This document shows positions 18,466 through 45,839 of a stretch of DNA of 64,000 nt, one piece after another. Both the position numbers and the translations under genes were made by a program. The DNA is from Macrostomum lignano. Taxonomy: Eukaryota. Below the pieces are notes generated by a model. That model had not been told where the DNA came from. It worked only from the letters and a program-made list of their open reading frames with translations, and ran no database searches. Within the stretch, counting starts at the first letter, position 1; every line of letters begins with the position of its first letter. The stretch covers positions 146,780-210,779 of the forward strand of contig NIVC01002709.1 of assembly GCA_002269645.1 (NCBI GenBank), read 5' to 3'.

Positions 18466-18565
18466 ATCGCAGAGCTGTACTTTGTAAAATAACAATTTTA
18501 CATATAAGCTGCTGCTAGCAACAGCTGTGGTATCGCTGGGCCTCCCAACCTTAGTCGAGCCGATG

Positions 18566-21064: not shown

Positions 21065-21575
<511 letters not shown>

Positions 21576-23168: not shown

Positions 23169-23269
23169 TTTTTATTGAATTTTTAAATCACTGAATCGGA
23201 AAGAGCAACTATTTGGGAAGCGGAAATCATTCACTGTTTTTGTCTTTGCTTTTATCTCTGTGTTGGCTG

Positions 23270-23625: not shown

Positions 23626-23744
23626 AGTATGATTAAAGTAGGCCTAATGTTACCTAGGGGATAAGGTTGATTTACTAATTTTTCGACTGCATACAAAGCA
23701 AATCAGTTTAAAGAAGATCAGCCAAAACTAGTTTTTACTAAATA

Positions 23745-24457: not shown

Positions 24458-25489
24458 GTCCGACTAGATAAGTAGGTTTTTTGAGACAATAAATTTTCAA
24501 GTCTTTTCATTCTTCGCATCCAGCATCATTTTCGAAATTAATATTCGCCTCTACTACTTGTAAAAGTAGCAGGTAGCAGTTAATCATTAAGAAATTATTA
24601 ATTTTGTGTAAATAATCTTCATTTCGAAATTGCATGCCCCAGCAAGTCAACGAATAATCGATGCACATGTGACTGAATAAACAATTAAACCTGTGTTTGG
24701 ATGTGGCTTACAATGTTCAGAGTGGAAAGGTGGAAATTTTAGACGAGCATTTCATTCCAAGGATTTTTTATTTATTAATTTGTAAGAAATTCTGCTTAAC
24801 GTAATCTATTTTTAGTAACAAAGCAGCTAAAAGCAGAAAACTAGTGGGACGCCAAGGTCTGTTAAATAAAGCTACTCAAATCACTTAAAGGGTTGTTTGT
24901 GATTCCTCTTGTCACGTTTTCAGTACGTGAATTCTAGGATCTGCTTCAGGAATAACTTTTCATCCACATGGCCGGGGTGAGAGGGAATATCAGGCAATCT
25001 CCTCCTCTGGCAAGCATGCTTTTGCTATTTTAGTAGCTAAATAGCTAACCCTCAGGAAAGCCTGCTTATAGATTTATACATGCCTTAGAAGAGAAAGTAA
25101 ACTGGTTCCATTTGCTAGTGGTGCGCATAGCAACTTATTAATGTAATTATCTTAATTGAACTTAATTGATTTAATTAATATGTGTGTAAAAATACAAAAT
25201 TAAATATAAAATTTTAAACAATAGTTTTTAGCCAGGTGTATTAAATATATAAAGATAATTAACATTGGAACAATTGTATTGATAAAATGTATCAGTATGT
25301 AGCAGTGTTAAGTAATTATGAGGCGTGAAGGCAGCAGTTCCGAAGGTTTGTTTTTGTTTAGCAGTTTAGGTTTTGAGTGTAGTTAGGCTTGTTAGACTTG
25401 AGTACATATAGTGTCGGGTGGCTTTATTTAATTTCATAGAAAATTATAAATTTCGGAAATATTCGGAAAGCATGTGCTCAGCAGGAGGG

Positions 25490-28080
25490 AAACACAGAGA
25501 GGGGAGGCAGAGAGACACAGAGAGGGGAGGCAGAGAGACACAGAGAGGGGAGGCAGAGAGAAACAGAGAGGGGAGGCAGAGAGACACAGAGAGGGGAGGC
25601 AGAGAGACAGAGAGAGGGGAGGCAGAGAGACAGAGAGGGGAGGCAGAGAGACAGAGAGGGGAGGCAGAGAGAGAGAGGGGGAAACAGAGAGACAGAGAGG
25701 GGAGGCAGAGAGACACAGAGAGGGGAGGCAGAGAGACACAGAGAGGGGAGGCAGAGAGAGACAGAGAGGGGAGGCAGAAAGACACAGAGAGGGGAGGCAG
25801 AGAAAGACAGACACAGAGAGGAGAGGCAGAGAGAGAGAGAGAGAGAGAGACAGAGAGGGGAGGCAGAGAGACACAGAGAGGTGAGGCAGAGAGACACAGA
25901 GAGGAGAGGCAGAGAGAGAGAGAGACACAGAGAGGGGAGGCAGAGAGACACAGAGAGGGGAAGCAGAGAGACACACAGAGAGGGGAGGCAGAGAGACACA
26001 GAGAGGGGAGGCAGAGAGACACAGAGAGGAGAGGCAGAGAGAGAGAGAGACACAGAGAGGGGAGGCAGAGAGACACAGAGAGGAGAGGCAGAGAGAGAGA
26101 GACACAGAGAGGGGAGGCAGAGAGACACAGAGAGGGGAGGCAGAGAGACATAGAGAGGGGAGGCAGAGAGACACAGAGAGGGGAGGCAGAGAGATACAGA
26201 GAGGGGAGGCAGAGAGACACAGAGAGGGGAGGCAGAGAGACACAGAGAGGGGAGGCAGAGAGACACAGAGAGGGGAGGCAGAGAGACATAGAGAGGGGAG
26301 GCAGAGAGACATAGAGAGGGGAGGCAGAGAGACACAGAGAGGGGAGGCAGAGAGACACAGAGAGGGGAGGCAGACAGACACAGAGAGAGGCAGAGAGACA
26401 CAGAGAGGTGAGGCAGAGAGACACAGAGAGGAGAGGCAGAGAGAGAGAGAGACACAGAGAGGGGAGGCAGAGAGACACAGAGAGGGGAAGCAGAGAGACA
26501 CACAGAGAGGGGAGGCAGAGAGACACAGAGAGGGGAGGCAGAGAGACACAGAGAGGAGAGGCAGAGAGAGAGAGACACAGAGAGTGAAGAGTTGATTCGG
26601 GAGGTGATCAGTCTCTCGAAAACTCCCACTTCCAGACACTTAAGCCTGGGAACAAAATAAAGTGATCACTTACTGTTGCGGGCTCCTCTTCTGTGGAGTG
26701 CAGGTTCTCCGAGCTCGTTTCTTCTAATCTTCTTCTTCTGTGTAGTGCAGGTTCTCCGAGCTCGTTTCTTCTAATCTTCTTCTTCTCCGGAGGAATCTTC
26801 TTGAAGTCTCGAATCGGCCGAATGAGAGCGTGACGATCAAATCAGGCGACGTCGCAGTATTTCTCGAATGCAAATCAATATAGGCCTTACGCTCAGTAAT
26901 CAATATCAACGATGCGCCCTTGTAATAAAATCAACTTTCTGTAATAATCACGAGGACCTCCAAGAGGGGCGTCTTCTTCTAGATCTAACGGAATCGGAGT
27001 CGTGTGCTCCTATCGGTTAATCTAGGATAACCAAAATCAATCAATCGATAATCCTCTAAGGGTATCGGAATCGGTCCGCAGATCCTATCCAATCCCTTAG
27101 GAAAATGGGAGGCCTCAAATTCAATGAACTCAGTCCAAACGACTGGACAGTAGCGGCCGGCAATAAATCGCTCTCAAAATCAATAACAAAGGCTCGAGCA
27201 ACGGCTCACCAATTGGTTTATCTCTCTCTCTCTCAGAGATGTAGCCTCGCTTAGCTGTTCCAGCAAGCTCCAAGATCTTTAGAGGCTGCTCCGAGTCCCA
27301 AGATCTTTTGAGGCTGCTCCGAGTCTGAGATTTTTAGCTCGGATTTTGGCTTGTATTTATAGGAAAAATTCTTGAGAAACAGCTTATTTTTAGTAGGTGA
27401 CAGTTTAGCGCTTTGGAAATTTGGCCCCTATGGAATACATTAGGTTTGAGCGTCAATACCATATTCGGAGTTCTAAATTTAAGTGTTGCAAAAGATGGTC
27501 ATTTGTTGCTTTCGTGGTCTTTAAAAATAGAGTGTGACAATTTGCAGTTTTTACATCATTCAAGTTTTTCGCATTTTTATGTTACTACTTACAGTAGTCT
27601 GCTTGTAATGCCTCTGGAGATCTCTACAAGAGGGGAGGCAGAGAGACACAGAGAGGAGAGGCAGAGAGACATAGAGAGGGGAGGCAGAGAGACACAGAGA
27701 GGGGAGGCAGAGAGATGCAGAGAGGGGAGGCAGAGAGACACAGAGAGGGGAGGCAGAGAGACACAGAGAGGGGAGGCAGAGAGACACAGAGAGGGGAGGC
27801 AGAGAGACATAGAGAGGGGAGGCAGAGAGACATAGAGAGGGGAGGCAGAGAGACACAGAGAGGGGAGGCAGAGAGACACAGAGAGGGGAGGCAGACAGAC
27901 ACAGAGAGGAGAGGCAGAGAGACACAGAGAGGGGAGGCAGACAGACACAGAGAGGAGAGGCAGAGAGAGAGAGAGAGACACAGAGAGGGGAGGCAGAGAG
28001 ACACAGAGAGGAGAGGCAGAGAGAGAGAGACACAGAGAGGGGAGGCAGAGAGACACAGAGAGGGGAAGCAGAGAGGAAGA
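25490..28080 (+). repeat. 23-bp GA-rich minisatellite (AGAGAGGGGAGGCAGAGAGACAC), interrupted by a solo LTR
   Basis: Read directly; uninterrupted versions at ~44023-44940 and ~59687-60650. Confidence 0.95.
26585..27628 (-). mobile_element. Putative solo LTR (1044 bp)
   Basis: Unique sequence starting TGAAGAG and ending CTCTACA (TG..CA, 6/7 inverted match), flanked by AGAG on both sides. Minus-strand CTATAAATA at ~27354-27362; internal short direct repeats; no coding signature. Absent from the other two minisatellite copies. Confidence 0.65.
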
Positions 28081-28980
28081 CACGGTTAAATTGCCTTATA
28101 TAGAAAGTGTTGTTTACACGGAAATTTCTAGAAGGCTGGATACGATAACAGTCCCCCCACGCCGGGGTTGGAGTCCTGACGGAGTAAGGGAGAAGTATCT
28201 ACTTTACATTTACAGAGATGGACCTTGATACAATCGCCTGCTAGTACTGGGTGATACATATACTTCAGGTAGCGACATGTAGGTGTGGTGCTGTCACAAA
28301 TGTTCAGGTTACAATGCTACCAGAATTTCTATTATTGAATCAATAATTTCGGAAACAATCAGGTACTTGTGTATTTTTAGTAATCGACAAGCTATAAACT
28401 AAGGACAGAAAATCGGTCAGGAAGTCACATGTTTACCTCACATATATACACTCATGATTTGTCTGTGGCGTTTCCAACTATATATGGCATTCACCGCTGG
28501 CATGCGATGAGCCGCGCCGAAGGTAAACAAGCCGTGTTTAGCATTACTGCAGCCTTCGGCTCGCTGCCATAAATAGGTGCCAATCTTTCTAAAAAAAGGG
28601 ATCGAGTGGAATTTAAATGAGGTAAAATTATAAATGTATCGCCAACACGACAATCATTGAAATTAATTGAAATTGAAGCCCGGACCGTATTGTGTACTGC
28701 GTGAAACTATGCAAAATGCACAGAAGTGTTCTGTGTCTCCATGCGCTCGAATAGAAACAAACTTTTTATTGAAATTCAAGAGAAAAACAAGAGAAAAGCT
28801 GAGTAACTATACAAAAGATAATTGTTTAAAAACAATTCACTGCACTTTTTGCGATCCTTGATTGAGTTAAAGAATAACATATATGACAAAGCAATAACGT
28901 TTCTGTGAAACATGGCAGCAGAAAACCCAGTGTCAAAGCAAAGATAATAATAATAATTTGACTACACCTTTCTTAACGTG

Positions 28981-31215
28981 TGTAGCGAGTGAATCAAAAC
29001 GCAGTGGAATTTGTTTTGTGGAAGTGAGATAGAACGGTTGTAAACCCTTGACGGGCTCTAACTTCGGCTTTATTCGATTTTAGAGACAGTAACGAGAACA
29101 GCTTAAGAATATCGTCTAGGGCCAAAAGGGACTCGCTGCTAGCTGATTAATGCTTCTCACTGCTACAAGATACTCCCCCTCCTAGATGAAGTACATCACT
29201 ATGCATTATCTAATCGGAGACAAAAAGTTCGAACAGCGCAGGGGAACGAGTAGGTAAGCAATGCAGATGTCATAGGTTGATCAGTTTATGAACACTGTTC
29301 AGGTATTGCTAGGTGGACTGTCCTTCTGGAAAACTTGCACGGAGGTCTCGCTCTTGAATCGCACGCGATTTGCGCTGCGCGACCTTGTGTTAGAGGCGGG
29401 AGCGTCGCTTGGCGGGGCCGGTGTAGCTGCTGGCTGCTCTAGTTGGGCTATTGGTAGGGTGGCGGGCTTGACACGATCGATCGACACTACGGTAGGCTTG
29501 CCGTTGATCTTGAGTGTCATTGTGGTGTCGTGCCTGTCCAGTACGGCGTACGGGCCTTGGTAAGGAGCCTCCAGGGGTCGTCGCACCCGGTCCAACCGCA
29601 ACCAGACGTGTGTGCACGAACTCAGCGCGGCTGGCAGATGCACGGCTATCTCGCGCGTTCTCAGCTGCCGGTATGGGAAGAAAAGCTGATGTAGGCTAGT
29701 CGAGAGCTCCTTGAGCGCAGAAGTGTCGATGACGACTGGTGGGACCAGCGGTTGCTCACCCGTAACAACGGAGAACGACGGGCAGCTGCTGCAGCCAGTT
29801 CTTGCCGCGCGCCTTCAAACCGAGCTTCAGCGTCCGGTGTGCACGTTCGATGACACCGTTTGCTCTCGGATTATAGGCTGAAGTGCGGATGTGGTGGATG
29901 CCGAGTAGGTCCGTCAAGTTTCTTATGAGCTCCGCTCGGAATTGGGATCCCTGGTCACTGATCAGCGTCAAAGGTGGGCCTTTGCGTCAAAGGCGTCAAA
30001 GGTGGGCATCCGCAGGTATTCGAACGAGCCGAACGGGGTACAAATCGCCGTCTTCTCGATGTCCTCATCTGCCATCGGAACGAAGTGATAGGCCTTGACG
30101 AGGTCAAGAGTGCTGAAAACTTTCGCACCGTGCAGCTGATGATGGAAATGGTTGATATTAGGGATAGGGTAGCGGTCTGGCTTGGTTGCCGCGTTTAAGG
30201 CTCGATAGTCTCCGCAAGGTCTCCAGGAGCCGTCCTTTTTCTTCACCATGTGAAGCGGGGAGGCCGACAGACTGGCGGAGGGGCGGACGATGCCAAGGCG
30301 CAGTGAGCTTGTCGAACTCCGCTTTTGCAACCGCGAACTTGGCAGGGGCAAGCGGTCGCGGTCGACAAAAAATGCGCTCGCCAGTGGTCTCAAAACGATG
30401 CCGAACCGACGTGGCGGGTGCTGCGGTGTAGTCCGGAGCTTCCAGAACTCGAGGGAACCGAGCAAGCGGTGTGGTGGGCTCAAGCAGCGTGTTGGCGTTG
30501 ATTTGAGGGACTGAATCACTAGAAGAACAGAGAGTCGCACGCAAAGATGTCACAGGGTCTTGAATGCGCCGTGAATTCAGGTCAATTAGGAGACCGAGCT
30601 TGAGGAAGAAATCTGCACCGAGGATTGGCGCAGTACTAGTAACAATGAACGTCGCAAGGGTATAGTCTAGGTTCGGATTTTGCCGCCTTCGACGCCACAA
30701 AGCTTGACATAAGTGGGTACGAGTAGATTTTGAGGAACAAACTGCAAAGGAAGGAGCGACCGTTCGGCGCCGGTGTCAACGATGAACGAAACGGGCGCAC
30801 GGAGAACTTGGCAACGAAGCAGCAACGTGGTGGCCTTTGACGGGTCGCGGCTCGGCCGAGGCACATGACCGACTATTTTGACGCCTGGCTTGGCGTCGGG
30901 CTGGACGCCCGGGACTGAACCGGAGTGGGCTGACGGCTGGCCAGCAGTGTCGGCGGTTTCGAGCCTGGCCACTGGCACCATGGTCGACAGGTGCGAGCAT
31001 CGGCAGCGTAGTAGAGATGACCGTTGCAGATCTTGGGTCGTCGGCGTGAGTTCCGGTTGGAGCACGAGTCGTCGGGCTTCCTGTTACGAAAAGAACCAGC
31101 GTTGCCTCTCAGGTGCTCTTGGCCGGTGGCCGAGGTGCGGTTTACAGAGGCGAACGGGGTGGCGCAACCGGCGACAGCCAGCATGCTGTCGGCGATCTTT
31201 GCAAACCACTTTGCA
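28981..31215 (-). mobile_element. Internally deleted Ty3/Gypsy element of CsRn1 type (gag end, protease, RT start, integrase end, PPT, 3' LTR)
   Basis: Gag CHCC motif C-NG-H-x9-C-RPW-C; protease IVDTGAERS; [35 protein letters not shown]; integrase ISDQGSQF..YNPRANGVIER..LEAPYQGPY; PPT at 29173-29183; LTR TGTAGC..GCTACA at 28981-29167. The 5' part is replaced by a SINE junction. Confidence 0.9.
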
Positions 31216-31219
31216 GACC

Positions 31220-31400
31220 ACCGCCACACACCCTCAATTACCCCAGCTAATGCTGGCACCCATTTTACAGCTTGGTGAACTGAAGCAATGCAGAGTTGAA
31301 TTGAGTGTCTTCCTCAAGGACAGAATTGTTCCGAATGGGACGAGAATCGAACCTCTGATCTTTCAGTCGTGAATCCGACGCTCTAACCACTATAACCCAC
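31220..31400 (-). mobile_element. tRNA-derived SINE, 3'-truncated at the Gypsy junction
   Basis: Same family as 13200-13478 (..TTAGAGCGTCGGATTCACGAC..GGTTCGATTC..); copy at ~48080-48260. Confidence 0.8.
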
Positions 31401-31404
31401 TATA

Positions 31405-32000
31405 AATTAATGAATAATTAATAAATTTTAACATTCCAAAAGTCTGAATATTAAACAAATTTTAACATTTCAAGTCAGAATAATTAACAAATTTTAACAT
31501 TTCAACTCTGAATAATTAACAAATTTTAACATTTAAAGTCTAAATAATTAATAAATTTTAACATTCCAAAAGTCTGAATAATTAACAAATTTTAACATTT
31601 AAAGTCTGAATAATTAACAAATTTTAACATTTCAAGTCTAAATAATTAATAAATTTTAACATTCCAAAAGTCTGAATAATTAACAAATTTTAACATTTAA
31701 AGTCTGAATAATTAACAAATTTAAACATTTCAAGTCTGAATAATTAACAGATTTTAACATTTAAAGTCTAAATAATTAATAAATTTTAACATTCAAAAAG
31801 TCTGAATAATTAACAAATTTTAACATTTAAAGTCTGAATAATTAACAAATTTAAACATTTCAAGTCTGAATAATTAACAGATTTTAACATTTAAAGTCTA
31901 AATAATTAATAAATTTTAACATTCAAAAAGTCTGAATAATTAACAAATTTTAACATTTCAGGTCTGAATAATTAACAAATTTTAACATTTCAAGTCTGAA
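31405..32000 (+). repeat. AT-rich 32-bp satellite with a 98-bp (32+32+34) higher-order pattern
   Basis: Unit AAGTCTGAATAATTAACAAATTTTAACATTT(C/A); AGTCT starts at 31571, 31603, 31635 and 31669. Copy at ~48265-48860; not present downstream of gene copy A. Confidence 0.9.
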
Positions 32001-32291
32001 TACGAGCGTACTTAACAACATCTTGTACCTTTAACAGAGACCTCTTCGCAAAATGAGAAACAGATCCATGTAAATATCAGCTTCTCCTCCTGCAACACGG
32101 CAACGAGTGAAATTTTCAAGTATGAGCTGAATATTAAAAAAATTATCAAAAATTACAAGCCATATTGATTTGCTGAGCGCGTTAAATGAATCTGGATAAG
32201 ACAAGAACGAGAATTCATCTGTTAGTTAGTGTCAAATATCAGTACGGGAAAAGCTCACAAAAAACTGCATCGCAAGCCATACACCGCCTCC

Positions 32292-35200
32292 TCAGAAGCC
32301 ATCGGATGCCTCACGGACCGCGTGCCGCTCTCCTCTGCTCACAGCACAGTAGTAAACCGACTGGAAGGAATAAAAGTGTTGCTGAGTTATTCTCACATGA
32401 AATGCCTGCTTGATACAAGCTGAGTCTCACGTTGGGGTCGGGCGGCTTGGCAGCAGCCAGCAACTCCACGGCCGCACCCTGGCTGGCAGCGGCGGCTGCC
32501 GCGGCAATCGCTGCGCCGTCCACTGCGCCCGCTACCAGAGCTGCCTGTAGCGCACGCTGAAGGACAATGTGTACTTTGTGAGCAGTGATCGAACCCTGTG
32601 AGCATTCTCACACAAACTAAAACTTGAATGCTCACGAAACACGGCTCGAAAAGTCCTCGAGCTCTTCACCGGTGAGAACACAGCGCCGAGACCGGGAAAG
32701 CTCTGGCTGATCAGACACGTCACAGTGACCTCATCCTGTCGCTCAAAGAACTGGTGAGTCAGTCGAGCTCTCCGAATCCAGCCTCCGTGGCTGCCTCTGA
32801 GATCGGGCTCAGGAGTGAGCTGCTCAGTAACATCGAAGGTCAAGTAGAGGGCCGTGAGTTATGACATTGAGAATGCATGTACAGCAATGATGGACAGCAG
32901 CTTTGGTAGCCGCAAACATGAACTCACAGTGAGTCCTTCAATGCTGACTGTGTCGGACTTGATCGAGCAGTGCAGCTCGGGCCTCGGGTTTCCCTCCTGT
33001 GTCTGTCCCAGCAGACTCAGCTCAGAGCCGTTCAGCAGCTGGCCAGTCCAACCGATGCTGTTCGAAGGAACTGCAAGACAGTGCAATGACAGTTTTGCCA
33101 TCCATTTTAGTAAGTTACGTCGGGCTTCAACCTGTAGCTAGTGCGTGCTTTCTGCTAGAAGTTCGAGAGGTTCCTTCCTACTCACAGAACACAGTAATGT
33201 TTTGTACGAAATGTTACTCATTATCTCGCTTATCTATCACGACTCCGCACATCGCAAACAGCGTAGCGGGTCAGGGTTCCCGATACCATAATCTTTGGTC
33301 CCATTTAAGTACGAGCTAACAACAGCCACCATTGCCACAGCATCAATTAAAGGCTTAAAATTCAAAACGGGAATAAATCATTGTGTTCAGAGCTCGGTGC
33401 AGGTCTCAGTCATTGGTTCCATGAGTTGAATGCTCAATAAGGATAAGGATAAAGATTCGTTTTTGACCCAACGCGAAAAGTTATATCATTGATGCATAAT
33501 TCATTTCTGTCGACTGACAGTCCATGCCTCTAAACAGCTGATAAATAATTTATAAATCAACAATGAAATAGAACAAAGTGTAATTCACAAGTACGTTCCA
33601 ATTGACCTGCAACAGGCTCAGCAGGTAATTACTTACTTATTGTAACAAGTATGAAGCTGAATACTCACAATAGACAGTAACGTTCTGTGTGAATCTGCCA
33701 TCCAGATCTTCGAGGCCATGCTGAGAGACCCTGCACTCCAATGACCTTCCGTTCATCTGCCTTGTGGAACTCAAGCTGAACTCAGATTCCACCAGCGTCT
33801 CAACGCCTAGATTTTGAGCCTCGGGGTTGTTCTGGGCCCTGGTCATGCTGGTGCTGAGACCCTCGGCTGTCCGCAGCCAGCACCGGTGACTCGGCTCAGG
33901 GTTGCCACCGACTGACCGAACTGAGACTGACACGGGCTCGCCCTCCATCATCACCAGAGGCTGAGTTGCATTCCATGAGCTGTTTGACGCGTCTGTTTTC
34001 GTGCAGGTGCGAGCATGGATGGTTAATTGTCTCAGCAATCTGAGTTGCTGATGGATCAGAGATGCTGAACTGCAATCCACTCACATGACACATCGAGTTG
34101 CTCACTGCTGACAGACTGATTGAATACAAGTGTGCCGTCTGCATGAGTCTGAGCGACCTGGCAGATGACTCTCATCTGGTTGTGGCTGGCCGATGCATTG
34201 AGTCGCCACACTGATGAAGCATTTGACTCAGATGGCAGCTGAGTCAACAGAGTCAGTAATTTATAAATTTATACATAATTTTTGCATTGACAATTCACAG
34301 TGAGTAACTCACTCTGAGCTGTTTCAGATTGGCTCCACCGATTGAGCAGAAGTGCTGAGCAGGCGGATTTCCTGTTTCCAGCGTCTGCAGGGTGACTTGA
34401 GCTTCTATTCCACTGCGGATTCGTCCAGGAGGCAGCTTGATTGACAGGCCGGAGCTGCGGTCTGAAATGCAGTTCGGTATGGCAGTCAGGTGAGCTGCAT
34501 TGGATCTAACTGGTGAACTGGTTCCGCATTGGATCTAACTGGTGAACTGGTTCCGCATTGGATCTAACTGGTGAACTGGTTCCGCATTGGATCTAACTGG
34601 TGAACTGGTTCCGCATTGGATCTAACTGGTGAACTGGTTCCGCATTGGATCTAACTGGTGAACTGGTTCCGCATTGGATCTAACTGGTGAACTGGTTCCG
34701 CATTGGATCTAACTGGTGAACTGGTTCTGCATTGGATCTAACTGTTGAACTGGAGAACATGCATCCAAGAACAAGCAGAAGTACATGGACACTTACACAG
34801 AACTGCAGGCAGCTCGCGACGAGCCGTTACATCGAACAGTCCTGACTGGTTCACCCGACACAAAATTGATGCTGAGCTTCCCCAGCTCCTGCTCACAGTC
34901 ACTGAGAATGTGCTGCTTGAGTTCGTGCTCTGAAAAGAGTCAGTTTTCACAGATAATTGTCAGATCATTGTTGCCATGCACCCAATACACAGGTGCAACC
35001 ATGGGCCAGTGTGAGACTCACTGACAGCAGCTGAAGCGCTGTGTTTCCATTTCGCTGTGACTGCACAGAGCAGCTGTGGCTGACTGGCATCCAGTAGCAA
35101 CCCGGTGTGTCAGCTGTCAGATTGACGGCTGCTCCGTCTGTCCAGCTGGTGTTTGCGGGGAGCAGAAAGTGAGTGGTGCAGGGCTCTGGAAGGGTTTGAG

Positions 35201-36996
35201 TAGTGAGTGGTGCAGGGCTCTGGAAGGGTTTGAGTAGTGAGTGGTGCAGGGCTCCGGAAGGGTTTGAGTAGTAAGTGGTACATGGCTCTGGAAGAGTTTG
35301 AGTAGTGAGTGGTGCAGGGCTGTAAGCCTGGGTTTGTAAGCCTGACTCACTGGCTGACTGCACACCCAGTGTGTGCGAAGTGCCAATCGCAGTCCCACCG
35401 CTGCAGCTGTGTCGGCACTTCAAAGCCGCCCCGTGCATTTCCATTCGCACTGTAAAAGTTCTCAGAATCAGAGAGCTGGCCGAGACCGCCCTCTGCAATG
35501 CGAACGCCCACCGGTGCTGTTAATTCCCATATCTGGTGCAAGCTCAAGTATTTATCTCAATCGAACTCTTACCGAACTCAACTCCAAGAGGTCACTGCCT
35601 TTCCGCATTCTGATGCTGCAGTTTGATGCAACAGGTGCTTTGCAGTTTCCTGGCAGCCGAGCTCGAATCATCACTTTCTCATTGAGCTTGAGCTGAGACA
35701 AGTCTTCCACAAAGCATCCCCTGGGTTGTTCTTTACAGAAGTCAGCTGGAGAGCAGCCAGAGCTGCTGTCTCTGTTACGCTGAAAGCAGTCTCTTTTCTC
35801 AATTTCAAGCAGCACAAAGTTCATCATCTTGTCAGTCTGATTGGCCACGAACTTCCTCAGCAGCACATACTGCGCCATCTGCAATGCGATGCTGCAACAC
35901 TGCGAATTCCAATATTGAAAGAGTTGCAGCAACTGGGTGACAAACCTTGCCATCGGCCTCAGCTGAGCAGGTCACTTCATGCACCGACTGCGACCTGAGT
36001 GAGCTGCTGCTGTCATTTCTGGTGAAGCCGCAGTGTTGGAATCCGGACAGACTGTGACTGAAGTTGGCAGCAGTGCAGTTGGGTGCATCCTCATCCAGAC
36101 CGGCTGGCTTCTCCTCACTGAGCAGCACTTCGATGCCCATGGCTCTGTGGCTCACTGAGAAAAGTTTAGTGAGCAAAATCTGATTTCAAAATATCGTTCA
36201 GATTGATACTGAAATGTGAAGGGAGGACTCACCCTCCTGTCTCCCATAGACAGTGATGGAGCGCACTGGGACACTTCGGGTCAGCTTCAGCAGCAGCCAC
36301 TGGTAGCCGGAGGGGTCCGGAGTGTCGCTGGTAAGAAAATAGGCCCACTGCCCCGGCTTGTCCATTGATCTGATGAAGCAGTCGCATTCTGGGTGATTGT
36401 AGACAGACGATTGCCAGGCATTGGCGATCTCAGCTCTGGAGACCTTGATGGCACAGCCTGTGGATGTGGAGGTTCAACAACTTCGAAATATGACCTGTTA
36501 TGAGACCATTGTGCGTTGTTTACGCTTTTGTCACAGTCAGCCAATTAGATAGAACTGCACGTAAGTCAACTACAACTCCATGGACATTTGCTCCATGGAC
36601 AGCTAAAGTAGAAGAAAGTTTTCAGTGTTTTTTTAACTTCTGAACTTCTGGATTCAAAATCCAGCAAGTATGCCTTGTGTCCGAGGTACGCTCACCAGTT
36701 TACCAGTACGATTTCACTGGAACTGCTACCGGAGACCGGCAGATAAACACACAGTTTCAGTGAACGAAATCTCAGCTGTTTCTGGTTGTAGTGTGCAAAT
36801 TCTCCCCACAGAATTTTCCAATGGCGAAACCTCATCCAGAGCTTAGTTCTCAAAAACTGAAAACTTTCAATCCCACTAATCAGCATCAGCAAAAATAATT
36901 GAATTCTTTAAGGAGAAACAGTCGTAGTCACTTACTGTTACTTATACAGTACGAAATGATTGCAAGGCACAGAAGTTCCTTCATGTGGACAGTCAT
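32292..36996 (-). CDS. Copy B of the lectin/Ig gene; ectodomain intact, TM exon shortened (secreted variant or pseudogene)
   Basis: ATG 36996; exons 1-12 collinear with copy A with splice sites conserved. Exon 13 (32556-32431) is 126 nt versus 206 nt in A. The homologous acceptor gives a frameshift (stop at 32311); an acceptor at 32540 restores frame (stop at 32292) but without the TM helix. Confidence 0.7.
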
Positions 36997-37450
36997 ATCG
37001 CAGAGCTGTACTTTGTAAAATAACAATTTTACATATAAGCTGCTGCTAGCAACAGCTGTGGTATCGCTGGGCCTCCCAACCTTAGTCGAGCCGATGTTTA
37101 TAGGAAAGCGGCAGGGCTGCGTGTGGAGGCGGAAATGCAGCCGCAGCCCATAGGCTGGAAGAAGATTGGCTGGCTCTGGCTGGCTGCAAAACAGGCAAGC
37201 GAGGTGCGAGATTGGAGGCCAATGAGGCTGGCGAAGATGGCGGAATCAGCAGCTTCTCTCAGCAGTGAGGGGCTTGAAGAAATGTGAGTACAGAAGATCC
37301 TCATTCATTTTCTGCCTGCCTGGGGGGTCTTTCTCAAAAGCAACTTATGATCGGCCATAGACGTAAGTTGGGGAGGAAGTGCCTGTGCTATAGAATCAAG
37401 AGTAATTTTAAGAGCTAGGAGGCTCCTTTAAGGAGACCATTTTAGGAGAC

Positions 37451-37643
37451 CAGTGGCGGATCCTGGGGGGGGGGCAAGGGGACCATGGCCCCCCCTCAGC
37501 TGCCTCGAAAAAAATTCTGCTCTTGGCCTTTGGCCCCCTTCTACCAGTAAGTAAAGAAAGGGCTTGGGCCTTGGGGTGGGTTCCTACTCGGGGCAGTATG
37601 AAAAAAGTTGGCCCCCCTCAATAAATTCCTGGATCCGCGCCTG
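37451..37643. mobile_element. hAT-type MITE (duplicate of 18920-19114)
   Basis: Same TIRs and TAGGAGAC TSD; poly-G run 2 nt shorter. Confidence 0.9.
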
Positions 37644-38111
37644 TAGGAGACCTCATAAAGGTTTCTGCAAGTGCTAAAGAATAAGGATTGAGGAGTTGGA
37701 GCTACTGTGGGTGCTGGGTGTTGCCGTTTCGGAGTGAATTTTAGGAGTGCGTGTCCTATAGAAGGAGCGAATTTCATTTCTAGCTCCTAACTCCGATAGT
37801 TAAGATTTCAAGGGCCAAATTGTACTCTTAGGTTAGTAGGAGTGTCTTTTTGTCATGTTTCGGACAGTGACCTGGGCTCTGACGATAAAGAAGCCAACGT
37901 TTGGCGACCCAGGCAATTCAGGCAAAGGATAAACTCTTCGAAGAATTTCGTACTGCATCTCGATTTCGGCTCAATAAGAGTCAACGCCAATTTCAACAAA
38001 CATGTTGCATCTTAAAGCATCACGAATCAGCTTAGATTCCGACATGTACTATTTTCTGTGAGCTGTTTTGCTGAGCACAATATTTACCACTTTTATGGTC
38101 TCTAATAGCAC

Positions 38112-38609
38112 TCTAAGTACGGCGTGGTGGTCGAGCTAATGAAAAACAACGACTTTCTAGTCAAGCTGACCAGCGGCCGGGTTCTTCGGAGAAACCGAAA
38201 GTTCCTACGGAGAAGGTTTCCAGCACATGCGGCGGAAGCTCGCTACCAGCCCAATACTGGCCCTGCGGACTCGCAAGGTACGAATGGAGCCAGAGGGCCG
38301 GAAGGACGATCAAGACCGTGGCATACGAGAAACCGTCGGCCACCCAACAGGCTTCAGATTGACCCCCGCAAAAGTTCGTACGACTGACTGACAAGAAGTC
38401 ACATTGTAACTGAAGGGGGAGGTGTTGTGTATGAGTGTGCATATGCATGTGTGTGACACTGAAGCTTGGGCTATACTCGTATGAATATTACTGTCTATGG
38501 TATAAATACACGTGACGGCCTAGAGAGACGGCCATGCCCTCTGAGCTTTAGTTTCATCAGACCGCGCGCTATAGAAGATATAACCCTCTCGGCTTCGCGA
38601 TATATAACA
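38112..38609 (+). mobile_element. Gypsy integrase end, PPT and LTR (duplicate of 19583-20080)
   Basis: Identical ORF translation; LTR at 38423-38609. Confidence 0.85.
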
Positions 38610-39616
38610 CCTTCACCCTTCTTATACAATATTTCTTATACCAGAGTTAGTTGTTTATCAAATGGGAGCAATTAACTAACGATAGCAGTTAAACCATTTA
38701 CTATTGACTTGGTCTATCAACTAATTAAATGCGCAGGCTTGTAGTCTAAAATGGTTTTATTGCTTTACACGCTCGTAGCTCACGAGAGCCGCTTTTCACA
38801 GGGCAATAAAAGCTTGTTGTTGTTGCATACTCCTTAAAAGTGCATATATTTAGGAGGAGTTTAATATAGCACGCAGATTGGCCAGACTTCTTAGCCAATC
38901 ACGCATCGGCAATTCTAGGATTGCAATCTGTGAAACTTACTCAGGCAGAATAAAACAAAACAAAACCAATTCAGACAATCTTCAAAACTCCTAAAACAAA
39001 AAAATTTTCAGCTTCAGTAATACTTTATTTTTGCAACGCTTTATTCGCATTTCTGATTAACGGAGTAATAAAACAATCAGATAAGAGTTATCAATCAGTC
39101 AGTCAATCAGTCACTGGAACACACGCAAGTCAGAGAGGCAAGCAAAGCTACTCAATCAGTGATTATCAAACGCCATTGGCAGGAGTCGGACTCCCCATCG
39201 GTTCTGCTGTGGAGCTCAAATGACAAAATAAAAAGTTAAAACAAGGAAAAGCGAGGCGATCGACAGAAATATTCGGCGAAATGTTTCAGCCAGCAGTCCG
39301 AAAAAGGGGATCAGGCCGCAGGGAGGATGATAAACAGTTTATAGCAGTGCAGGTGCGCTTAACCGATTGGTGCAGCTGCACCAGAGCAGTGCAGTGCCCG
39401 GTGCGAGGGTGCAAATCCTGCGGCTCTGATCCCCTTTCCTCAGGGCAGTGCTGAACGGCCATGCAAAAAGAGCGAAAAGTACACAAACCGTCAAGTAAAA
39501 GTGCAAGCGGTAAAATAAATCTATATTTCGATACATATCGGTAGGTTGCATTCGCTGAAACTCTTGAAACTCAGTCAAGAGATAAGAGATACAGTCTGTC
39601 TGTCTGTCTGCCTGCC

Positions 39617-39781
<165 letters not shown>

Positions 39782-39836
39782 TAGTCTATGTGTTTGTCTG
39801 TCTGTCTGTCTGTGTCTATGGGCTTGTCTGTCTGCC

Positions 39837-39891
<55 letters not shown>

Positions 39892-39892
39892 G

Positions 39893-40053
<161 letters not shown>

Positions 40054-43000
40054 TTCTTAATGTCTGTCTGTCTGTCAGTCTGTCTGTCTGTCTGTCTGTC
40101 TTTCTGTCTGTCTGTCTATTTTAGTGTTTACTAAATAACACATTAAACCATTTACATTTCCAGTTAAACAAAAGGTCTTCAGAACTTGGGCTCCAACAAC
40201 CAAAGAGGAAATCCAAATAAATCAATATCTCAAAGCTCAATTCCATTGCCAACACTCACAGAGAAGTGCTAGAAGAAGTGGCTCATCAGAATCAAAGACT
40301 CCGGAATGCTTGCAGTGTGTGAAGAGAGACGGATATGCATAGAAACAGCAGAGGTGCATTAATCAGTTCTGATTGTTAGTGCTGGATTTCAGTAAAAAAG
40401 AACATAAGCTAAAAACTGTACCAGTTAAAATGATGAATAACAAGCATCGAATTTATGGCATTTTTATGTACAGGAAACCAAAATTAAATGAAATTTGGAA
40501 GTGAATCATGTTGCACATACAACAAATAATGTACTCATTTAGTATGACTGCCTGTTAAATTAGAATGGATTGCTAATCTACAATAGCATACAGTAAGACT
40601 AGCAATCCGATTATAGATAAAATTTGTGGCATAAAAATCGGCATACAGCTTCAGTGAGCATTCTGTTGACTTCGCGGACACAGCGGTCGCCAGGTCATTA
40701 ATATACACCAGTCAGAGGGTGGGGGCGAGAACGCTACCCTGTGTTAGGCCCTCGTGGAAGATGCGCTCCTTGCTAATGCTAATGCTAATTGCTAATGCTA
40801 ATGCTAATGCTAATGCTAATGCTAATGCTAATGCTAATGCTAATGCTAATGCTAATGCTAATGCTAATGCTTGCTAATGCAGTTGTTCACGCGCACTCTG
40901 GCTCGGCGATCCGTCAGAAAAGTGCGGATCCTGCGGATGACGTCTCTTTGGACGCCGAGTTCCCGCAGTTTCTTTTACAGTGCCGCGCGCCAGACTCTAT
41001 CGTAGGCGCGGCTGAAGTCGAAAAGACAAAGAATGGACCGGAGATGCGGGGTAGACTCCAATTTGTCGAAAATTTCCTGACAGGTGCTCGCAATCAATTC
41101 CTCCGTAGAGCGGCCCTTGCCTGAGGTTTCGAGGGCATGGCGGAGACGCTGGAGGACCAGCCGCTTTGCCAGTTTGGCTATACAACTCGTGAGGGCGACT
41201 GGGCGGTAGGAGTCAGGCTTGCTGGCGTCCTTTCCCTTTTTTGGAACGGAATGATGATGGCTCATTTCCATTGCCAAGGACATTCCCCCTTCTGCCAAGA
41301 GCGGTTAGTGATGGACAGGGTCCTGTCATCCGTGGAGGGTGGGGGTGCTTTAGCATTTCATTGGTGACGCCATCCTGCCCGGGGGCCTTGCAGACTTGCG
41401 GATGGCATTACAGTGCTCCGGGTTGCTGAAGGGCGAGCAGATACCACTTCGAGCTCCGTGCCCGTCACAGCAGTGTTCTTTAAGCACCTCGTTGGCTGGT
41501 CGGGTCACTGGGCGGTCCCTAGGGCTGGTTGCGACCCTGGAGACGGCGCTGTAGATCTGACAGAAAAGATTCGCCTTCTCTAGATCGGTACTCGCTGGTC
41601 TGCTGGGTGCGACGGGTCCCATTTGGGGGGGGGGGACTCGCTGCTCGGGTTGCTTGGGCCTTCTCCCCGCATTTGCTACTGAATGGCTAGAAGCAGCAAA
41701 TGTAGGCATTTTTTATTGAATTTTTAAATCACTGAATCGAAAAGAGCAACTATTTGGGAAGCGGAAATCATTCACTGTTTTTGTCTTTGCTTTTATCTCT
41801 GTGTTGGCTGGCGGGCGAGGTGGGTGAAGGAGTGAGGTGGGTGATGGTAGTGAGGTGGGTGAAGGAGTGGGATGGGCGATGGTAGTGAGGTGGGTGATGT
41901 TAGTGAGGTGGGTGAAGGAGTGGGATGGGTGAAGGAGTGAGGTAGGTGATGGTATGAGGTTGGCGATGGAGTGGGATGGGAGAAGAAGTGAAGTGAGTGA
42001 ACCAGTGAGGTGGGTGAAGGAGTGGGGTGGGTGAAGGAGTGGGTGGGTGAAGGAGTGGGGTGGGTGAAGGAGTGGGTGGGTGAAGGAGTGGGTGGGTGAA
42101 GAAGCTGGTGGGTGAAGGAGCGGGTGGGTGAAGGAGCAAGTGGGTGAAGGAGCGGGTGGGTGAGAGAGTATGATTAAAGTAGGCCTAATGTTACCTAGGG
42201 GATAAGGTTGATTTACTAATTTTTCGACTGCATACAAAGCAAATCAGTTTAAAGAAGATCAGCCAAAACTAGTTTTTACTAAATACACAGATACATAGAT
42301 ACATAGATGCATAGATGCATAGGTACATAGATACATAGAAACATAGATGCATAGATAAATATATACATAGATACCTAGATGCATAGGTACATAGGTACAT
42401 AGATACATAGATACATAGGTACATAGGTACATAGGTACATAGATACATACGTACATAGGTACATAGTTACATAGATATATAGATACATAGATACATAGAT
42501 ACATAGGTACATAGGTACATAGGTACATAGATACATAGATATATAGATACATAGATACATAGATACATAGATACATAGGTACATTGGTACATAGGTACAT
42601 AGATAAATAGATGCATAGATACATAGATCCATAGATACATAGGTACATAGGTACATAGGTAGGTACATAGGTACATAGGTACATATGTACATAGGTACAT
42701 ATGTACATAGGTACATAGGTACATTGGGACATAGGTACATTGGTACATAGGTACATAAATACATAGGTACATAGGTACATAGGTACATAGGTACATAGGT
42801 ACATAGATCCATAGATACATAGATATATAGATACATAGATACATAGATGCATAGGTACATAGGTACATTGGTACATAGGTACATAGGTACATAGATACAT
42901 AGATACATAGATACATAGATACATAGATACATAGATACATAGATACATAGGTACATAGGTACATAGGTACATAGGTACATAGGTACATAGGTCCGACTAG

Positions 43001-45839
43001 ATAAGTAGGTTTTTTGAGACAATAAATTTTCAAGTCTTTTCATTCTTCGCATCCAGCATCATTTTCGAAATTAATATTCGCCTCTACTACTTGTAAAAGT
43101 AGCAGGTAGCAGTTAATCATTAAGAAATTATTAATTTTGTGTAAATAATCTTCATTTCGAAATTGCATGCCCCAGCAAGTCAACGAATAATCGATGCACA
43201 TGTGACTGAATAAACAATTAAACCTGTGTTTGGATGTGGCTTACAATGTTCAGAGTGGAAAGGTGGAAATTTTAGACGAGCATTTCATTCCAAGGATTTT
43301 TTATTTATTAATTTGTAAGAAATTCTGCTTAACGTAATCTATTTTTAGTAACAAAGCAGCTAAAAGCAGAAAACTAGTGGGACGCCAAGGTCTGTTAAAT
43401 AAAGCTACTCAAATCACTTAAAGGGTTGTTTGTGATTCCTCTTGTCACGTTTTCAGTACGTGAATTCTAGGATCTGCTTCAGGAATAACTTTTCATCCAC
43501 ATGGCCGGGGTGAGAGGGAATATCAGGCAATCTCCTCCTCTGGCAAGCATGCTTTTGCTATTTTAGTAGCTAAATAGCTAACCCTCAGGAAAGCCTGCTT
43601 ATAGATTTATACATGCCTTAGAAGAGAAAGTAAACTGGTTCCATTTGCTAGTGGTGCGCATAGCAACTTATTAATGTAATTATCTTAATTGAACTTAATT
43701 GATTTAATTAATATGTGTGTAAAAATACAAAATTAAATATAAAATTTTAAACAATAGTTTTTAGCCAGGTGTATTAAATATATAAAGATAATTAACATTG
43801 GAACAATTGTATTGATAAAATGTATCAGTATGTAGCAGTGTTAAGTAATTATGAGGCGTGAAGGCAGCAGTTCCGAAGGTTTGTTTTTGTTTAGCAGTTT
43901 AGGTTTTGAGTGTAGTTAGGCTTGTTAGACTTGAGTACATATAGTGTCGGGTGGCTTTATTTAATTTCATAGAAAATTATAAATTTCGGAAATATTCGGA
44001 AAGCATGTGCTCAGCAGGAGGGAAACACAGAGAGGGGAGGCAGAGAGACACAGAGAGGGGAGGCAGAGAGACACAGAGAGGGGAGGCAGAGAGAAACAGA
44101 GAGGGGAGGCAGAGAGACACAGAGAGGGGAGGCAGAGAGACACAGAGAGGGGAGGCAGAGAGACAGAGAGAGGGGAGGCAGAGAGACAGAGAGGGGAGGC
44201 AGAGAGAGAGAGGGGGAAACAGAGAGACAGAGAGGGGAGGCAGAGAGACACAGAGAGGGGAGGCAGAGAGACACAGAGAGGGGAGGCAGAGAGAGACAGA
44301 GAGGGGAGGCAGAAAGACACAGAGAGGGGAGGCAGAGAAAGACAGACACAGAGAGGAGAGGCAGAGAGAGAGAGAGAGAGAGACAGAGAGGGGAGGCAGA
44401 GAGACACAGAGAGGTGAGGCAGAGAGACACAGAGAGGAGAGGCAGAGAGAGAGAGAGACACAGAGAGGGGAGGCAGAGAGACACAGAGAGGGGAGGCAGA
44501 GAGAAACAGAGAGGGGAGGCAGAGAGACACAGAGAGGGGAGGCAGAGAGACACAGAGAGGGGAGGCAGAGAGATGCAGAGAGGGGAGGCAGAGAGACACA
44601 GAGAGGGGAGGCAGAGAGACACAGAGAGGGGAGGCAGAGAGACACAGAGAGGGGAGGCAGAGAGACATAGAAAGGGGAGGCAGAGAGACATAGAGAGGGG
44701 AGGCAGAGAGACACAGAGAGGGGAGGCAGAGAGACACAGAGAGGGGAGGCAGACAGACACAGAGAGGAGAGGCAGAGAGACACAGAGAGGGGAGGCAGAC
44801 AGACACAGAGAGGAGAGGCAGAGAGAGAGAGAGAGACACAGAGAGGGGAGGCAGAGAGACACAGAGAGGAGAGGCAGAGAGAGAGAGACACAGAGAGGGG
44901 AGGCAGAGAGACACAGAGAGGGGAAGCAGAGAGGAAGACACGGTTAAATTGCCTTATATAGAAAGTGTTGTTTACACGGAAATTTCTAGAAGGCTGGATA
45001 CGATAACAGTCCCCCCACCGCCGGGGTTGGAGTCCTGACGGAGTAAGGGAGAAGTATCTACTTTACATTTACAGAGATGGACCTTGATACAATCGCCTGC
45101 TAGTACTGGGTGATACATATACTTCAGGTAGCGACATGTAGGTGTGGTGCTGTCACAAATGTTCATGTTACAATGCTACCAGAATTTCTATTATTGAATC
45201 AATAATTTCGGAAACAATCAGGTACTTGTGTATTTTTAGTAACCGAGAAGCTATAAACTAAGGACAGAAAATCGGTCAGGAAGTCACATGTTTACCTCAC
45301 ATATATACACTCATGATTTGTCTGTGGCGTTTCCAACTATATATGGCATTCACCGCTGGCATGCGATGAGCCGCGCCGAAGGTAAACAAGCCGTGTTTAG
45401 CATTACTGCAGCCTTCGGCTCGCTGCCATAAATAGGTGCCAATCTTTCTAAAAAAAGGGATCGAGTGGAATTTAAATGAGGTAAAATTATAAATGTATCG
45501 CCAACACGACAATCATTGAAATTAATTGAAATTGAAGCCCGGACCGTATTGTGTACTGCGTGAAACTATGCAAAATGCACAGAAGTGTTCTGTGTCTCCA
45601 TGCGCTCGAATAGAAACAAACTTTTTATTGAAATTCAAGAGAAAAACAAGAGAAAAGCTGAGTAACTATACAAAAGATAATTGTTTAAAAACAATTCACT
45701 GCACTTTTTGCGATCCTTGATTGAGTTAAAGAATAACATATATGACAAAGCAATAACGTTTCTGTGAAACATGGCAGCAGAAAACCCAGTGTCAAAGCAA
45801 AGATAATAATAATAATTTGACTACACCTTTCTTAACGTG

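What the first reader, a model, noticed from the sequence alone, without database searches (positions are those of the whole stretch)
36818..36911. Copy B is an A/C chimera with the crossover confined to ~94 bp of intron 1
Seen: left of this window B matches C and not A (AAAGTAG, AATCCAG, TTTTCC at 36817); right of it B matches A and not C (no CTTTAA duplication, CACAGAAG, MITE and LTR present). Inference: unequal crossing-over between A and C created B, joining A's promoter and signal-peptide exon to C's ectodomain and TM-less end, which is a direct mechanism for shuffling expression and specificity. An assembly join between haplotypes would look similar.
Basis: partly seen in the sequence, partly recalled or inferred. 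Interest (0 to 1): 0.7.

Follow-up and report, generated by a model that had tools for sequence, protein, structure and literature searches.

The report
Chimeric middle gene from unequal crossover
In a flatworm (Macrostomum) array of three immunoglobulin-like genes, the middle gene is a clean hybrid of its two neighbours, switching once inside intron 1; this is the textbook footprint of a very recent unequal crossover, and it creates almost no new protein, unless the assembly made it.

Summary
In a three-way alignment, about 123 informative sites or indels left of 36817 all read B=C≠A, with only two B-private changes. From the CTTTAA indel at 36906-36911 rightwards, about 64 of 65 read B=A≠C. 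The switch lies in 88 bp of perfect A/C identity inside intron 1 of a minus-strand gene.

- **Duplicated block:** 18287-36817 and 36818-53677 are near-identical full-period copies, about 0.05% different outside minisatellites. Hybrid B sits between its parents in the only orientation that one unequal crossover can produce. Non-allelic homologous recombination between paralogs A and C is the best explanation (about 0.7).
- **Assembly artefact:** a false duplication cannot be excluded without reads (about 0.25).
- **Functional claim overstated:** exon 1 encodes the same signal peptide in all three copies, so B's predicted protein is C's plus one K→M change.
- **Copy A:** it donated the 5' end, and it carries a premature TAG in exon 5.
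- **TM-less claim:** this holds. A keeps a family-typical transmembrane segment, while B and C lack 80 bp of it.
- **Organism:** Macrostomum lignano or a close relative.

This is an ordinary mechanism seen in a new locus. Interest is low to moderate.

The parts
36818..36911 (.). Crossover interval. It is 88 bp (36818-36905) identical in A, B and C, bounded on the left by the last B=C≠A site (36817). On the right it is bounded by the CTTTAA that is duplicated only in C.
18287..36817 (.). Duplicated block S1: the right part of A, the spacer and the left part of B (18,531 bp).
   Evidence: aligns end to end with S2, with 24 substitutions and 13 indel events, nearly all in minisatellites..
36818..53677 (.). 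Duplicated block S2: the right part of B, the spacer and the left part of C (16,860 bp).
13780..18465 (-). Gene copy A. Exons 1-9 run 18465-15134, followed by downstream Ig-like and TM/tail blocks to 13780. It has a premature TAG in exon 5.
32314..36996 (-). Gene copy B, the chimera. Exons: 36996-36936, 36457-36233, 36154-35946, 35878-35573, 35492-35351, 35185-35022, 34929-34797, 34461-34313, 33960-33669. Downstream blocks lack the TM segment.
49173..53862 (-). Gene copy C. Exons 1-9 run 53862-50528, and the 3' end lacks the TM segment.
36936..36996 (-). Exon 1 of B, encoding MTVHMKELLCLAIISYCISN(S), a signal-peptide-like N-terminus. The amino-acid sequence is identical in A, B and C. Site 36972 is a synonymous CTG (A, B) versus TTG (C).
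36458..36935 (-). Intron 1 of B (GT at 36935-34, AG at 36459-58). It contains the crossover interval.
16829..16831 (-). Premature stop codon TAG in exon 5 of copy A. B, C and all UniProt relatives have CAG (Gln) here.
13891..13971 (-). Transmembrane-helix coding segment of A (GVLLTVVISCLVAAAVAVGGAATAAVL, followed by KRTR). In B and C, 50+30 bp are missing here (around B:32470-32560) and the frame is lost.
33946..33948 (-). B-private codon change AAG→ATG (K→M) in the exon-9 Ig-like domain. It is the only amino-acid difference between B and C.
26585..27628 (.). Unique insert of about 1,045 bp inside the 23-bp minisatellite of A's spacer, absent from B and C. Together with about 630 bp of extra minisatellite it accounts for the 1,675-bp length difference between S1 and S2.
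37465..37613 (.). 149-bp MITE-like element with GGCGGATCC-type terminal inverted repeats. It is present in B and in A (18936-19084) and absent in C.
38112..38609 (.). 498-bp fragment that looks retroelement-derived (judged by eye; Pfam found no domain). It is present in A and B and absent in C.

Best explanation
**What it is.** The window holds a head-to-tail array of units, each about 17-18.5 kb. Each unit carries one minus-strand gene of a Macrostomum-specific family and about 12 kb of minisatellites and transposon debris. The family's architecture is a signal peptide, an N-terminal domain, several divergent Ig-like (C2-set) domains, and in full members a transmembrane helix and tail.

**How it arose.** A and C are older paralogs, about 2-3% diverged in substitutions within the gene, plus many indels. 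Misaligned pairing of C on one chromatid or homolog with A on the other was followed by one homologous crossover. That crossover fell inside an 88-bp identical stretch of intron 1. It produced the present A-B-C arrangement (non-allelic homologous recombination, the 'anti-Lepore' type of duplication product). The block from the breakpoint in A to the breakpoint in C now occurs twice, and B is the junction gene.

**Age and content.**
- The event is very young: 5 substitutions and 3 short indels in about 13.8 kb of unique sequence, against 2-7% between A and C.
- B is in effect a second copy of the TM-less C coding sequence. It sits behind A's exon 1 (same peptide) and A's 5' flank, which carries a MITE-like element and a probable retroelement fragment that C lacks.

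**Shown:** the mosaic, the duplicated block, the orientation, the gene models by homology, and the stop codon in A.
**Inferred:** that the DNA molecule really exists, that these genes are expressed, and any regulatory consequence.
For: - **Single clean switch.** About 123 sites read B=C≠A on the left and about 64 read B=A≠C on the right, in register, within an 88-bp identity tract.
- **Full-period duplication.** S1 (18287-36817) and S2 (36818-53677) align over their whole length with 24 substitutions and 13 indel events, nearly all in minisatellites. Only 7 differing columns in the right part and 2 sites in the left part lie in unique sequence.
- **Orientation.** The C-left plus A-right hybrid lies between A and C. 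That is the one arrangement a duplicating unequal crossover gives. The opposite hybrid would be the deletion product.
- **Shared spacer lesion.** Both young spacers share the same internal deletion of the retroelement. The spacer right of C has a longer copy, with an ORF at 61871-63613.
- **No gap.** The window contains no N. Gaps between the copies are a listed hallmark of false duplications (PMC9516828).
- **Structurally distinct copies.** S1 and S2 differ by a 1,045-bp insert, by minisatellite lengths and by a non-synonymous change. They are therefore not one sequence traversed twice.
- **Too similar to be homeologs.** The 0.05% divergence is about 30 times below the 1.39-1.58% reported between M. 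lignano subgenomes (PMC10733133).
- **Intact splice sites.** All nine exons keep AG/GT in all three copies.
Against: - No reads or independent assembly could be consulted. Three exact-protein look-ups found nothing.
- M. lignano assemblies are documented to contain wrongly expanded haplovariants (PMC10733133).
- An overlap assembler that tolerates about 4% divergence could join a contig ending in C to one starting in A through their paralogy. That would leave exactly such an in-register switch.
- All 7-8 polarisable differences between the blocks, and the large insert, are derived in S1 and none in S2. A true duplication should spread them over both blocks. The pattern could mean that S1 is a less well polished, under-collapsed copy.
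- The junction tract is only the 18th longest A/C identity tract of 133, so nothing singles it out as a preferred exchange site.
Confidence: 0.7

Rival explanations
1. Assembly artefact (false tandem duplication). The genome has only A and C. Two nearly identical versions of the A-to-C block (alleles, or an under-collapsed error-bearing read set) were laid in series. The join was made through the A/C paralogy, which created a chimeric B that does not exist.
For: - Expanded and collapsed haplovariants are reported for the M. lignano reference (PMC10733133).
- False duplications are common in unphased assemblies (PMC9516828).
- The blocks differ by only about 0.05%.
- All derived differences sit in one block, as expected if that block carries consensus errors. 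Three of them are 1-2 bp differences in short homopolymer runs.
Against: - There is no gap at or near the join.
- The join is exactly in register, inside an identity tract of only 88 bp that any read would span.
- The two blocks differ by a 1,045-bp unique insert, by about 630 bp of minisatellite and by real-looking substitutions, including a K→M change.
- The divergence is far below the subgenome divergence. The inbred DV1 line is reported to have almost no allelic heterozygosity, so there is little to drive a heterotype duplication. This applies only if the window comes from that line.
Confidence: 0.25
2. An older three-unit array was homogenised by gene conversion. B was an independent old copy, and long conversion tracts copied C onto B's left part and A onto B's right part (or the reverse), without any change in copy number.
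For: - Conversion between tandem paralogs is common (established knowledge).
- Three clustered differences at 28307-28388, where B=C≠A, could be a short conversion tract.
- A/C identity varies from 88% to 100% along the spacer.
Against: - It needs tracts that together cover a full 17-kb period, including spacer, minisatellites and retroelement.
- Those tracts would have to abut within 88 bp and leave no residual old-B sites among about 190 informative positions.
- One crossover explains all of this in a single step.
Confidence: 0.05

Closest known systems
Haemoglobin anti-Lepore type fusion genes (duplication product of unequal crossing-over between delta- and beta-globin). Cited from established knowledge; not tested here.
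   Same: Two diverged tandem paralogs flank a hybrid gene. The hybrid has the 5' part of the downstream gene (along the coding strand) and the 3' part of the upstream gene. There is a single in-register switch inside shared sequence, and the copy number goes up by one.
   Different: - Here the switch is in intron 1 and exon 1 is synonymous between the parents, so the hybrid protein is not a new combination.
- The repeat unit is 17-18 kb and mostly repeats.
- The organism is a neopolyploid flatworm.
- The product has not been confirmed in DNA molecules.
NAHR-generated copy-number variation in tandem gene arrays, for example the red/green opsin array or CYP21A2/CYP21A1P-type modules. Cited from established knowledge.
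   Same: Recombination occurs between direct paralogous repeats of about 96-98% identity. The result is hybrid genes with a promoter from one copy and the body from another, and a variable array length.
   Different: No population data here show recurrence. The breakpoint tract (88 bp) is short and is not the longest one available.
False (heterotype or homotype) duplications in genome assemblies (Ko et al. 2022, PMC9516828).
   Same: Two near-identical adjacent copies that inflate a gene family. The species has an assembly history of expanded haplovariants (PMC10733133).
   Different: There is no gap between the copies. The join is in register within paralogous sequence, and the copies differ by a 1-kb insert. 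The read-depth and k-mer criteria could not be applied.

Membership tests
Duplication product of unequal crossing-over (NAHR) between tandem paralogs | Two parental paralogs in direct orientation flank the hybrid unit. | tested here: met
   A, B and C are all on the minus strand and head to tail.
Duplication product of unequal crossing-over (NAHR) between tandem paralogs | The hybrid combines the proximal part of the distal unit with the distal part of the proximal unit. On the + strand this means left part from C and right part from A. | tested here: met
   B-left equals C-left with 2 differences in about 4.3 kb. B-right equals A-right at about 100% outside minisatellites.
Duplication product of unequal crossing-over (NAHR) between tandem paralogs | There is a single in-register switch inside a tract of sequence identity, with no junction insertion or deletion. 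| tested here: met
   The 88-bp tract 36818-36905 is identical in all three copies, and no mosaic patches occur on either side.
Duplication product of unequal crossing-over (NAHR) between tandem paralogs | The duplicated segment is exactly one period, from the breakpoint in one parent to the homologous breakpoint in the other. Its two copies are much more alike than the parents are. | tested here: met
   S1 and S2 differ by about 0.05% in unique sequence, against 2-7% plus indels for A versus C.
Duplication product of unequal crossing-over (NAHR) between tandem paralogs | The junction exists in real DNA molecules (spanning reads, doubled depth, PCR). | not testable with these tools
   No reads were available. 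The exact-protein look-ups returned nothing, and no ORF spans the junction.
False duplication in an assembly | There is an assembly gap between the duplicated copies on the same scaffold. | tested here: not met
   The window contains only A, C, G and T. The criterion comes from PMC9516828.
False duplication in an assembly | Read depth is half (or very low) over each copy, and haplotype-specific single-copy k-mers are present. | not testable with these tools
   No read data.
Immunoglobulin-superfamily type I membrane protein (the gene product) | At least one Ig-like domain is recognised by a curated profile. | tested here: met
   The exon-9 block matches Pfam C2-set_2 at E=5.8e-5, 23.5 bits, against a cut-off of 21. 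Relatives P0008 and P0013 sit at 21.0-21.4 bits. UniProt names the relatives 'Ig-like domain-containing protein'. The match is borderline.
Immunoglobulin-superfamily type I membrane protein (the gene product) | There is a C-terminal transmembrane helix followed by a cytoplasmic tail. | tested here: inconclusive
   - A has a 27-residue hydrophobic stretch followed by KRTR, homologous to the TM and tail of P0019.
- B and C have lost 80 bp of it.
- The exon linkage between exon 9 and this block is not established. All close UniProt models stop at exon 9.
Immunoglobulin-superfamily type I membrane protein (the gene product) | There is an N-terminal signal peptide. | tested here: inconclusive
   Exon 1 encodes MTVHMKELLCLAIISYCISNS, which is hydrophobic and matches the start of P0005. 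No signal-peptide predictor was available.

The most novel reading that the evidence does not exclude
The array is a live recombination hotspot in a Macrostomum-specific Ig-like receptor family. Recurrent unequal exchange and small conversions would keep re-pairing 5' regulatory modules with membrane-bound or TM-less (secreted) ectodomain bodies. They would also rescue or retire copies: here, an intact C-type body placed behind the 5' end of a copy whose own body carries a stop codon. This would give copy-number and isoform polymorphism between individuals of a neopolyploid flatworm, with possible roles in recognition or reproduction.
Probability: 0.1. Interest if true: 0.5.

Novelty: new member of a known kind. 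Interest (0 to 1): 0.25.

Why it matters
**If real**
- It is a well-resolved, very young example of unequal crossing-over in a flatworm, with the breakpoint narrowed to 88 bp.
- It shows how a lineage-specific Ig-like gene family grows. It doubles the dose of a TM-less form and places it behind a different 5' flank.
- It offers a copy-number marker that may vary between Macrostomum lines.

**If an artefact**
- It is a concrete, checkable case of family inflation in an assembly of a neopolyploid genome already known to be error-prone.

Either way, the mechanism itself is textbook and no new protein combination results.

Tried and rejected
1. **Independent assemblies.** The look-up of encoding contigs with P0005, P0001 and the window ORF 35552-35953(-) found nothing on record.
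2. **Junction-spanning ORF for an exact-protein look-up.** No ORF covers both 36817 and 36906 or beyond, so I dropped this route.
3. **Structure of the protein.** AlphaFold2 on P0005 with the 7-sequence family alignment gave mean pLDDT 27. The model is unusable, so I ran no fold search.
4. **Word-index homology search with A's 3' blocks.** It found nothing. The full HMMER search of representatives later supplied relatives (P0017, P0019, P0021) that do match these blocks.
5. **Mosaicism among the seven UniProt paralogs as evidence of family-wide recombination.** I rejected this. The a/c patterns are explained by 9 A-private and 6 C-private changes.
6. **Is the crossover tract the longest A/C identity stretch?** No. 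It ranks 18th of 133.
7. **Pfam on close relatives, for the N-terminal domain.** Only a sub-threshold F5/8-type-C hit turned up (E=0.13). UniProt calls one member 'MATH domain-containing', and Pfam did not reproduce that here.

Full report
**Layout of the window**

The window is 46.6% G+C and has no N. A self-comparison shows three head-to-tail units. A runs from about 13988 to 32540, B from about 32541 to 49399, and C from about 49400 to beyond 62600.

Each unit has one gene on the minus strand, followed by about 12 kb of repeats:
- minisatellites with periods of 4, 8, 17, 23 and 32 bp;
- LINE-like reverse-transcriptase fragments;
- a degenerate LTR-type retroelement.

**Organism and gene**

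I concatenated the candidate exons of B and searched 5.8 billion proteins. Only seven proteins hit, all UniProt entries of Macrostomum lignano named 'Ig-like domain-containing protein' (one is named 'MATH domain-containing').
- tblastn maps them to three loci in the window at 93-100% identity per exon. None of them is identical to A, B or C.
- The window is therefore M. lignano or a very close relative.

Using these models and the splice signals, I derived nine exons for B: 36996-36936, 36457-36233, 36154-35946, 35878-35573, 35492-35351, 35185-35022, 34929-34797, 34461-34313 and 33960-33669.
- Every AG/GT is conserved in A, B and C.
- Exon 1 encodes MTVHMKELLCLAIISYCISN(S).
- Intron 1 runs from 36935 to 36458.
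- Pfam recognises a C2-set_2 Ig domain in the exon-9 block (E=5.8e-5, 23.5 bits, cut-off 21). The N-terminal part gets only a sub-threshold F5/8-type-C hit.

A full HMMER scan of 1.84 billion representatives found only 22 relatives.
- The longer ones carry a C-terminal transmembrane helix and a tail.
- The family is therefore a small, lineage-restricted set of type I Ig-like membrane proteins.

**The observation**

A three-way MAFFT alignment of about 5.8 kb around the gene gave 190 variable events.
- Left of B:36817, every event reads B=C≠A (about 123 events). The two exceptions are B-private changes at 33947 and 34240.
- From the 6-bp CTTTAA duplication that only C has (B:36906-36911) rightwards, every event reads B=A≠C. 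The one exception is a 2-bp G-run length difference at 37464.
- The switch interval is the 88 bp 36818-36905, identical in the three copies, or 94 bp if the ambiguous placement of the indel is counted.
- The interval lies inside intron 1.

**The duplicated block**

One unequal crossover between A and C predicts that the stretch from the breakpoint in A to the breakpoint in C occurs twice. It does.
- S1 (18287-36817) and S2 (36818-53677) align end to end with 24 substitutions and 13 indel events.
- Nearly all of these lie inside minisatellites. In unique sequence there are 5 substitutions and 3 short homopolymer indels in about 13.8 kb.
- By contrast, A and C differ by 2.5% in exons, 1.7% in introns and 3.1% in the 3' flank. 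Across the spacer they are only about 88-100% identical, with many indels.
- The 1,675-bp length difference between the blocks has two parts: a unique insert of about 1,045 bp in A's 23-bp minisatellite (26585-27628), absent from B and C, and about 630 bp more minisatellite.
- The two young spacers share an internal deletion of the retroelement. The copy right of C does not have that deletion; it has a 580-codon ORF at 61871-63613.
- Topology also fits. On the + strand the product of a duplicating exchange must read A - (C-left + A-right) - C, and that is what is seen. The opposite hybrid would be the single-gene deletion product.

**What the chimera encodes**

B takes its promoter side and exon 1 from A, and everything from exon 2 onwards from C.
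- Exon 1 encodes the same 20 residues in all copies. The only difference is a synonymous CTG/TTG at 36972.
- B's predicted protein is therefore C's protein with one private change, K→M at 33947 in the Ig-like domain.
- The proximal 320 bp upstream of the ATG differ between A/B and C at 6 substitutions plus small indels.
- Further upstream, A and B carry three elements that C lacks:
  - a 59-bp segment;
  - a 149-bp MITE-like element with GGCGGATCC-type inverted ends (37465-37613);
  - a 498-bp fragment that looks retroelement-derived (38112-38609). That reading is by eye, and Pfam found no domain in its ORF.
- Any functional effect would thus be on regulation or dosage, not on 'specificity'.

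**An unexpected point about A**

- Under the homology-based model, copy A has a premature TAG in exon 5 (A:16831-16829). B, C and every relative have CAG there.
- A also has nine private amino-acid changes.
- dN/dS between A and C is 0.57.
- A may be a pseudogene. A cryptic GT donor just upstream of the stop could bypass it, and that remains untested.

**The TM-less end**

- Downstream of exon 9, A has open blocks that match relatives. One is an EGNPRPELHC Ig-like block (matching P0017 and P0021).
- A further block ends in GVLLTVVISCLVAAAVAVGGAATAAVL-KRTR…AAKPPDPN…FY. It aligns with the transmembrane helix and tail of P0019.
- B and C lack 50+30 bp inside this helix-coding segment, which shifts the frame.
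- Two caveats apply. The exon linkage downstream of exon 9 is unknown, and the close UniProt models all stop at the exon-9 donor.

**Real event or assembly artefact?**

Points in favour of a real event:
- The join is gapless. Gaps between copies are a hallmark of false duplications (PMC9516828).
- The join is in register inside an identity tract so short that any read would span it.
- The two blocks are structurally distinct sequences.
- Their 0.05% divergence is about 30-fold below the 1.39-1.58% reported between the S, L1 and L2 subgenomes of M. lignano. The inbred DV1 line is reported to have negligible allelic heterozygosity (PMC10733133).

Points against:
- The same paper states that the reference assembly contains wrongly expanded and collapsed haplovariants.
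- A tolerant overlap assembler could join through the 96% A/C paralogy and leave this picture.
- I polarised the few unique-sequence differences using the third paralog as outgroup. All 7-8 derived states, and the big insert, sit in S1 and none in S2.
  - A two-sided binomial test gives about 0.01-0.03.
  - It gives 0.125 if the homopolymer indels are dropped and the 28307-28388 cluster is counted once.
  - Neither a true duplication nor two alleles predict this asymmetry. A less well polished S1 would.

I could not reach reads or another assembly, and no ORF spans the junction for an exact-protein look-up. I put the real crossover at about 0.7, an artefact at about 0.25, and long abutting gene-conversion tracts at about 0.05.

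**Comparison with what is known**

This is the classic unequal crossing-over or NAHR duplication product. It is analogous to anti-Lepore haemoglobin genes and to hybrid genes in opsin-type arrays (established knowledge, not tested here).
- All four sequence-level defining features were tested and met.
- The fifth, existence in DNA molecules, is not testable with these tools.
- The breakpoint tract is unremarkable, the 18th longest of 133 A/C identity tracts.
- Nothing here is a new kind of system. It is a new, cleanly resolved instance in a little-studied gene family of a neopolyploid flatworm.

**Verdict**

- The mechanism is well supported but not proven physically.
- The functional gloss is overstated.
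- Interest is low to moderate (0.25).

The decisive test is cheap. It is to phase 36817 against the CTTTAA state in short reads, check depth, and run one junction PCR.

Noticed in passing
window 16829-16831 (minus strand, exon 5 of copy A): Copy A has an in-frame TAG where B, C and all M. lignano relatives have CAG. A also has nine private amino-acid changes. A may be a pseudogene even though it is the only copy that keeps the transmembrane segment.
   Followed up: partly
window 18287-36817 versus 36818-53677: All polarisable differences between the two young blocks (23199, 28159, 28307, 28384, 28388, 33947, 34240, plus the 1-kb insert) are derived in the first block and none in the second. 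This asymmetry is unexplained. Possible causes are uneven polishing, a small conversion tract, or chance.
   Followed up: partly
window 26585-27628: A unique insert of about 1,045 bp sits in the middle of the 23-bp minisatellite of A's spacer. It has no other copy in the window and no obvious terminal repeats. Its nature is unknown.
   Followed up: partly
window 61871-63613 (minus): The retroelement copy right of C keeps a 580-codon open frame. By eye it reads as an RNase H/integrase-type region; it was not scanned against Pfam. The copies in the A-B and B-C spacers share an internal deletion, and homology stops at 46839 / 62611.
   Followed up: partly
window 15963-16190, 34497-34753, 51357-51613; also 16605-16792: Intronic tandem repeats inside the gene (29-bp unit, 8-9 copies; 34-bp unit) differ in copy number between A and B/C. 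They create long spurious ORFs in the intron.
   Followed up: no
window 11959-13853: The sequence left of A resembles the inter-unit spacer at only 78-87% identity and lacks the retroelement. This looks like the relic of an older unit boundary, so the array is older than the three copies seen.
   Followed up: no
window 6001-9653 (minus) and 9508-10626 (minus): The left flank holds a LINE-type element (an endonuclease ORF and an RT ORF; Pfam Exo_endo_phos_2 and RVT_1). It also holds a PIF/Harbinger-like DDE_Tnp_4 transposase ORF of 372 codons (E=1.9e-33).
   Followed up: partly
window 37229-37281 (+), with equivalents in A and C: A plus-strand ATG followed 47 nt later by GTGAGT lies 230 bp upstream of exon 1, on the opposite strand. 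It is conserved in all three units. It could be the first exon of a divergent transcript, or it could be nothing.
   Followed up: no
proteins P0001-P0027: The gene family has only 22 representative relatives among 1.84 billion clusters. The seven close hits from the first search are all named M. lignano; the representative library carries no names. Profile hits are weak and limited to C2-set Ig. The N-terminal domain (exons 2-4) matches no curated family.
   Followed up: partly
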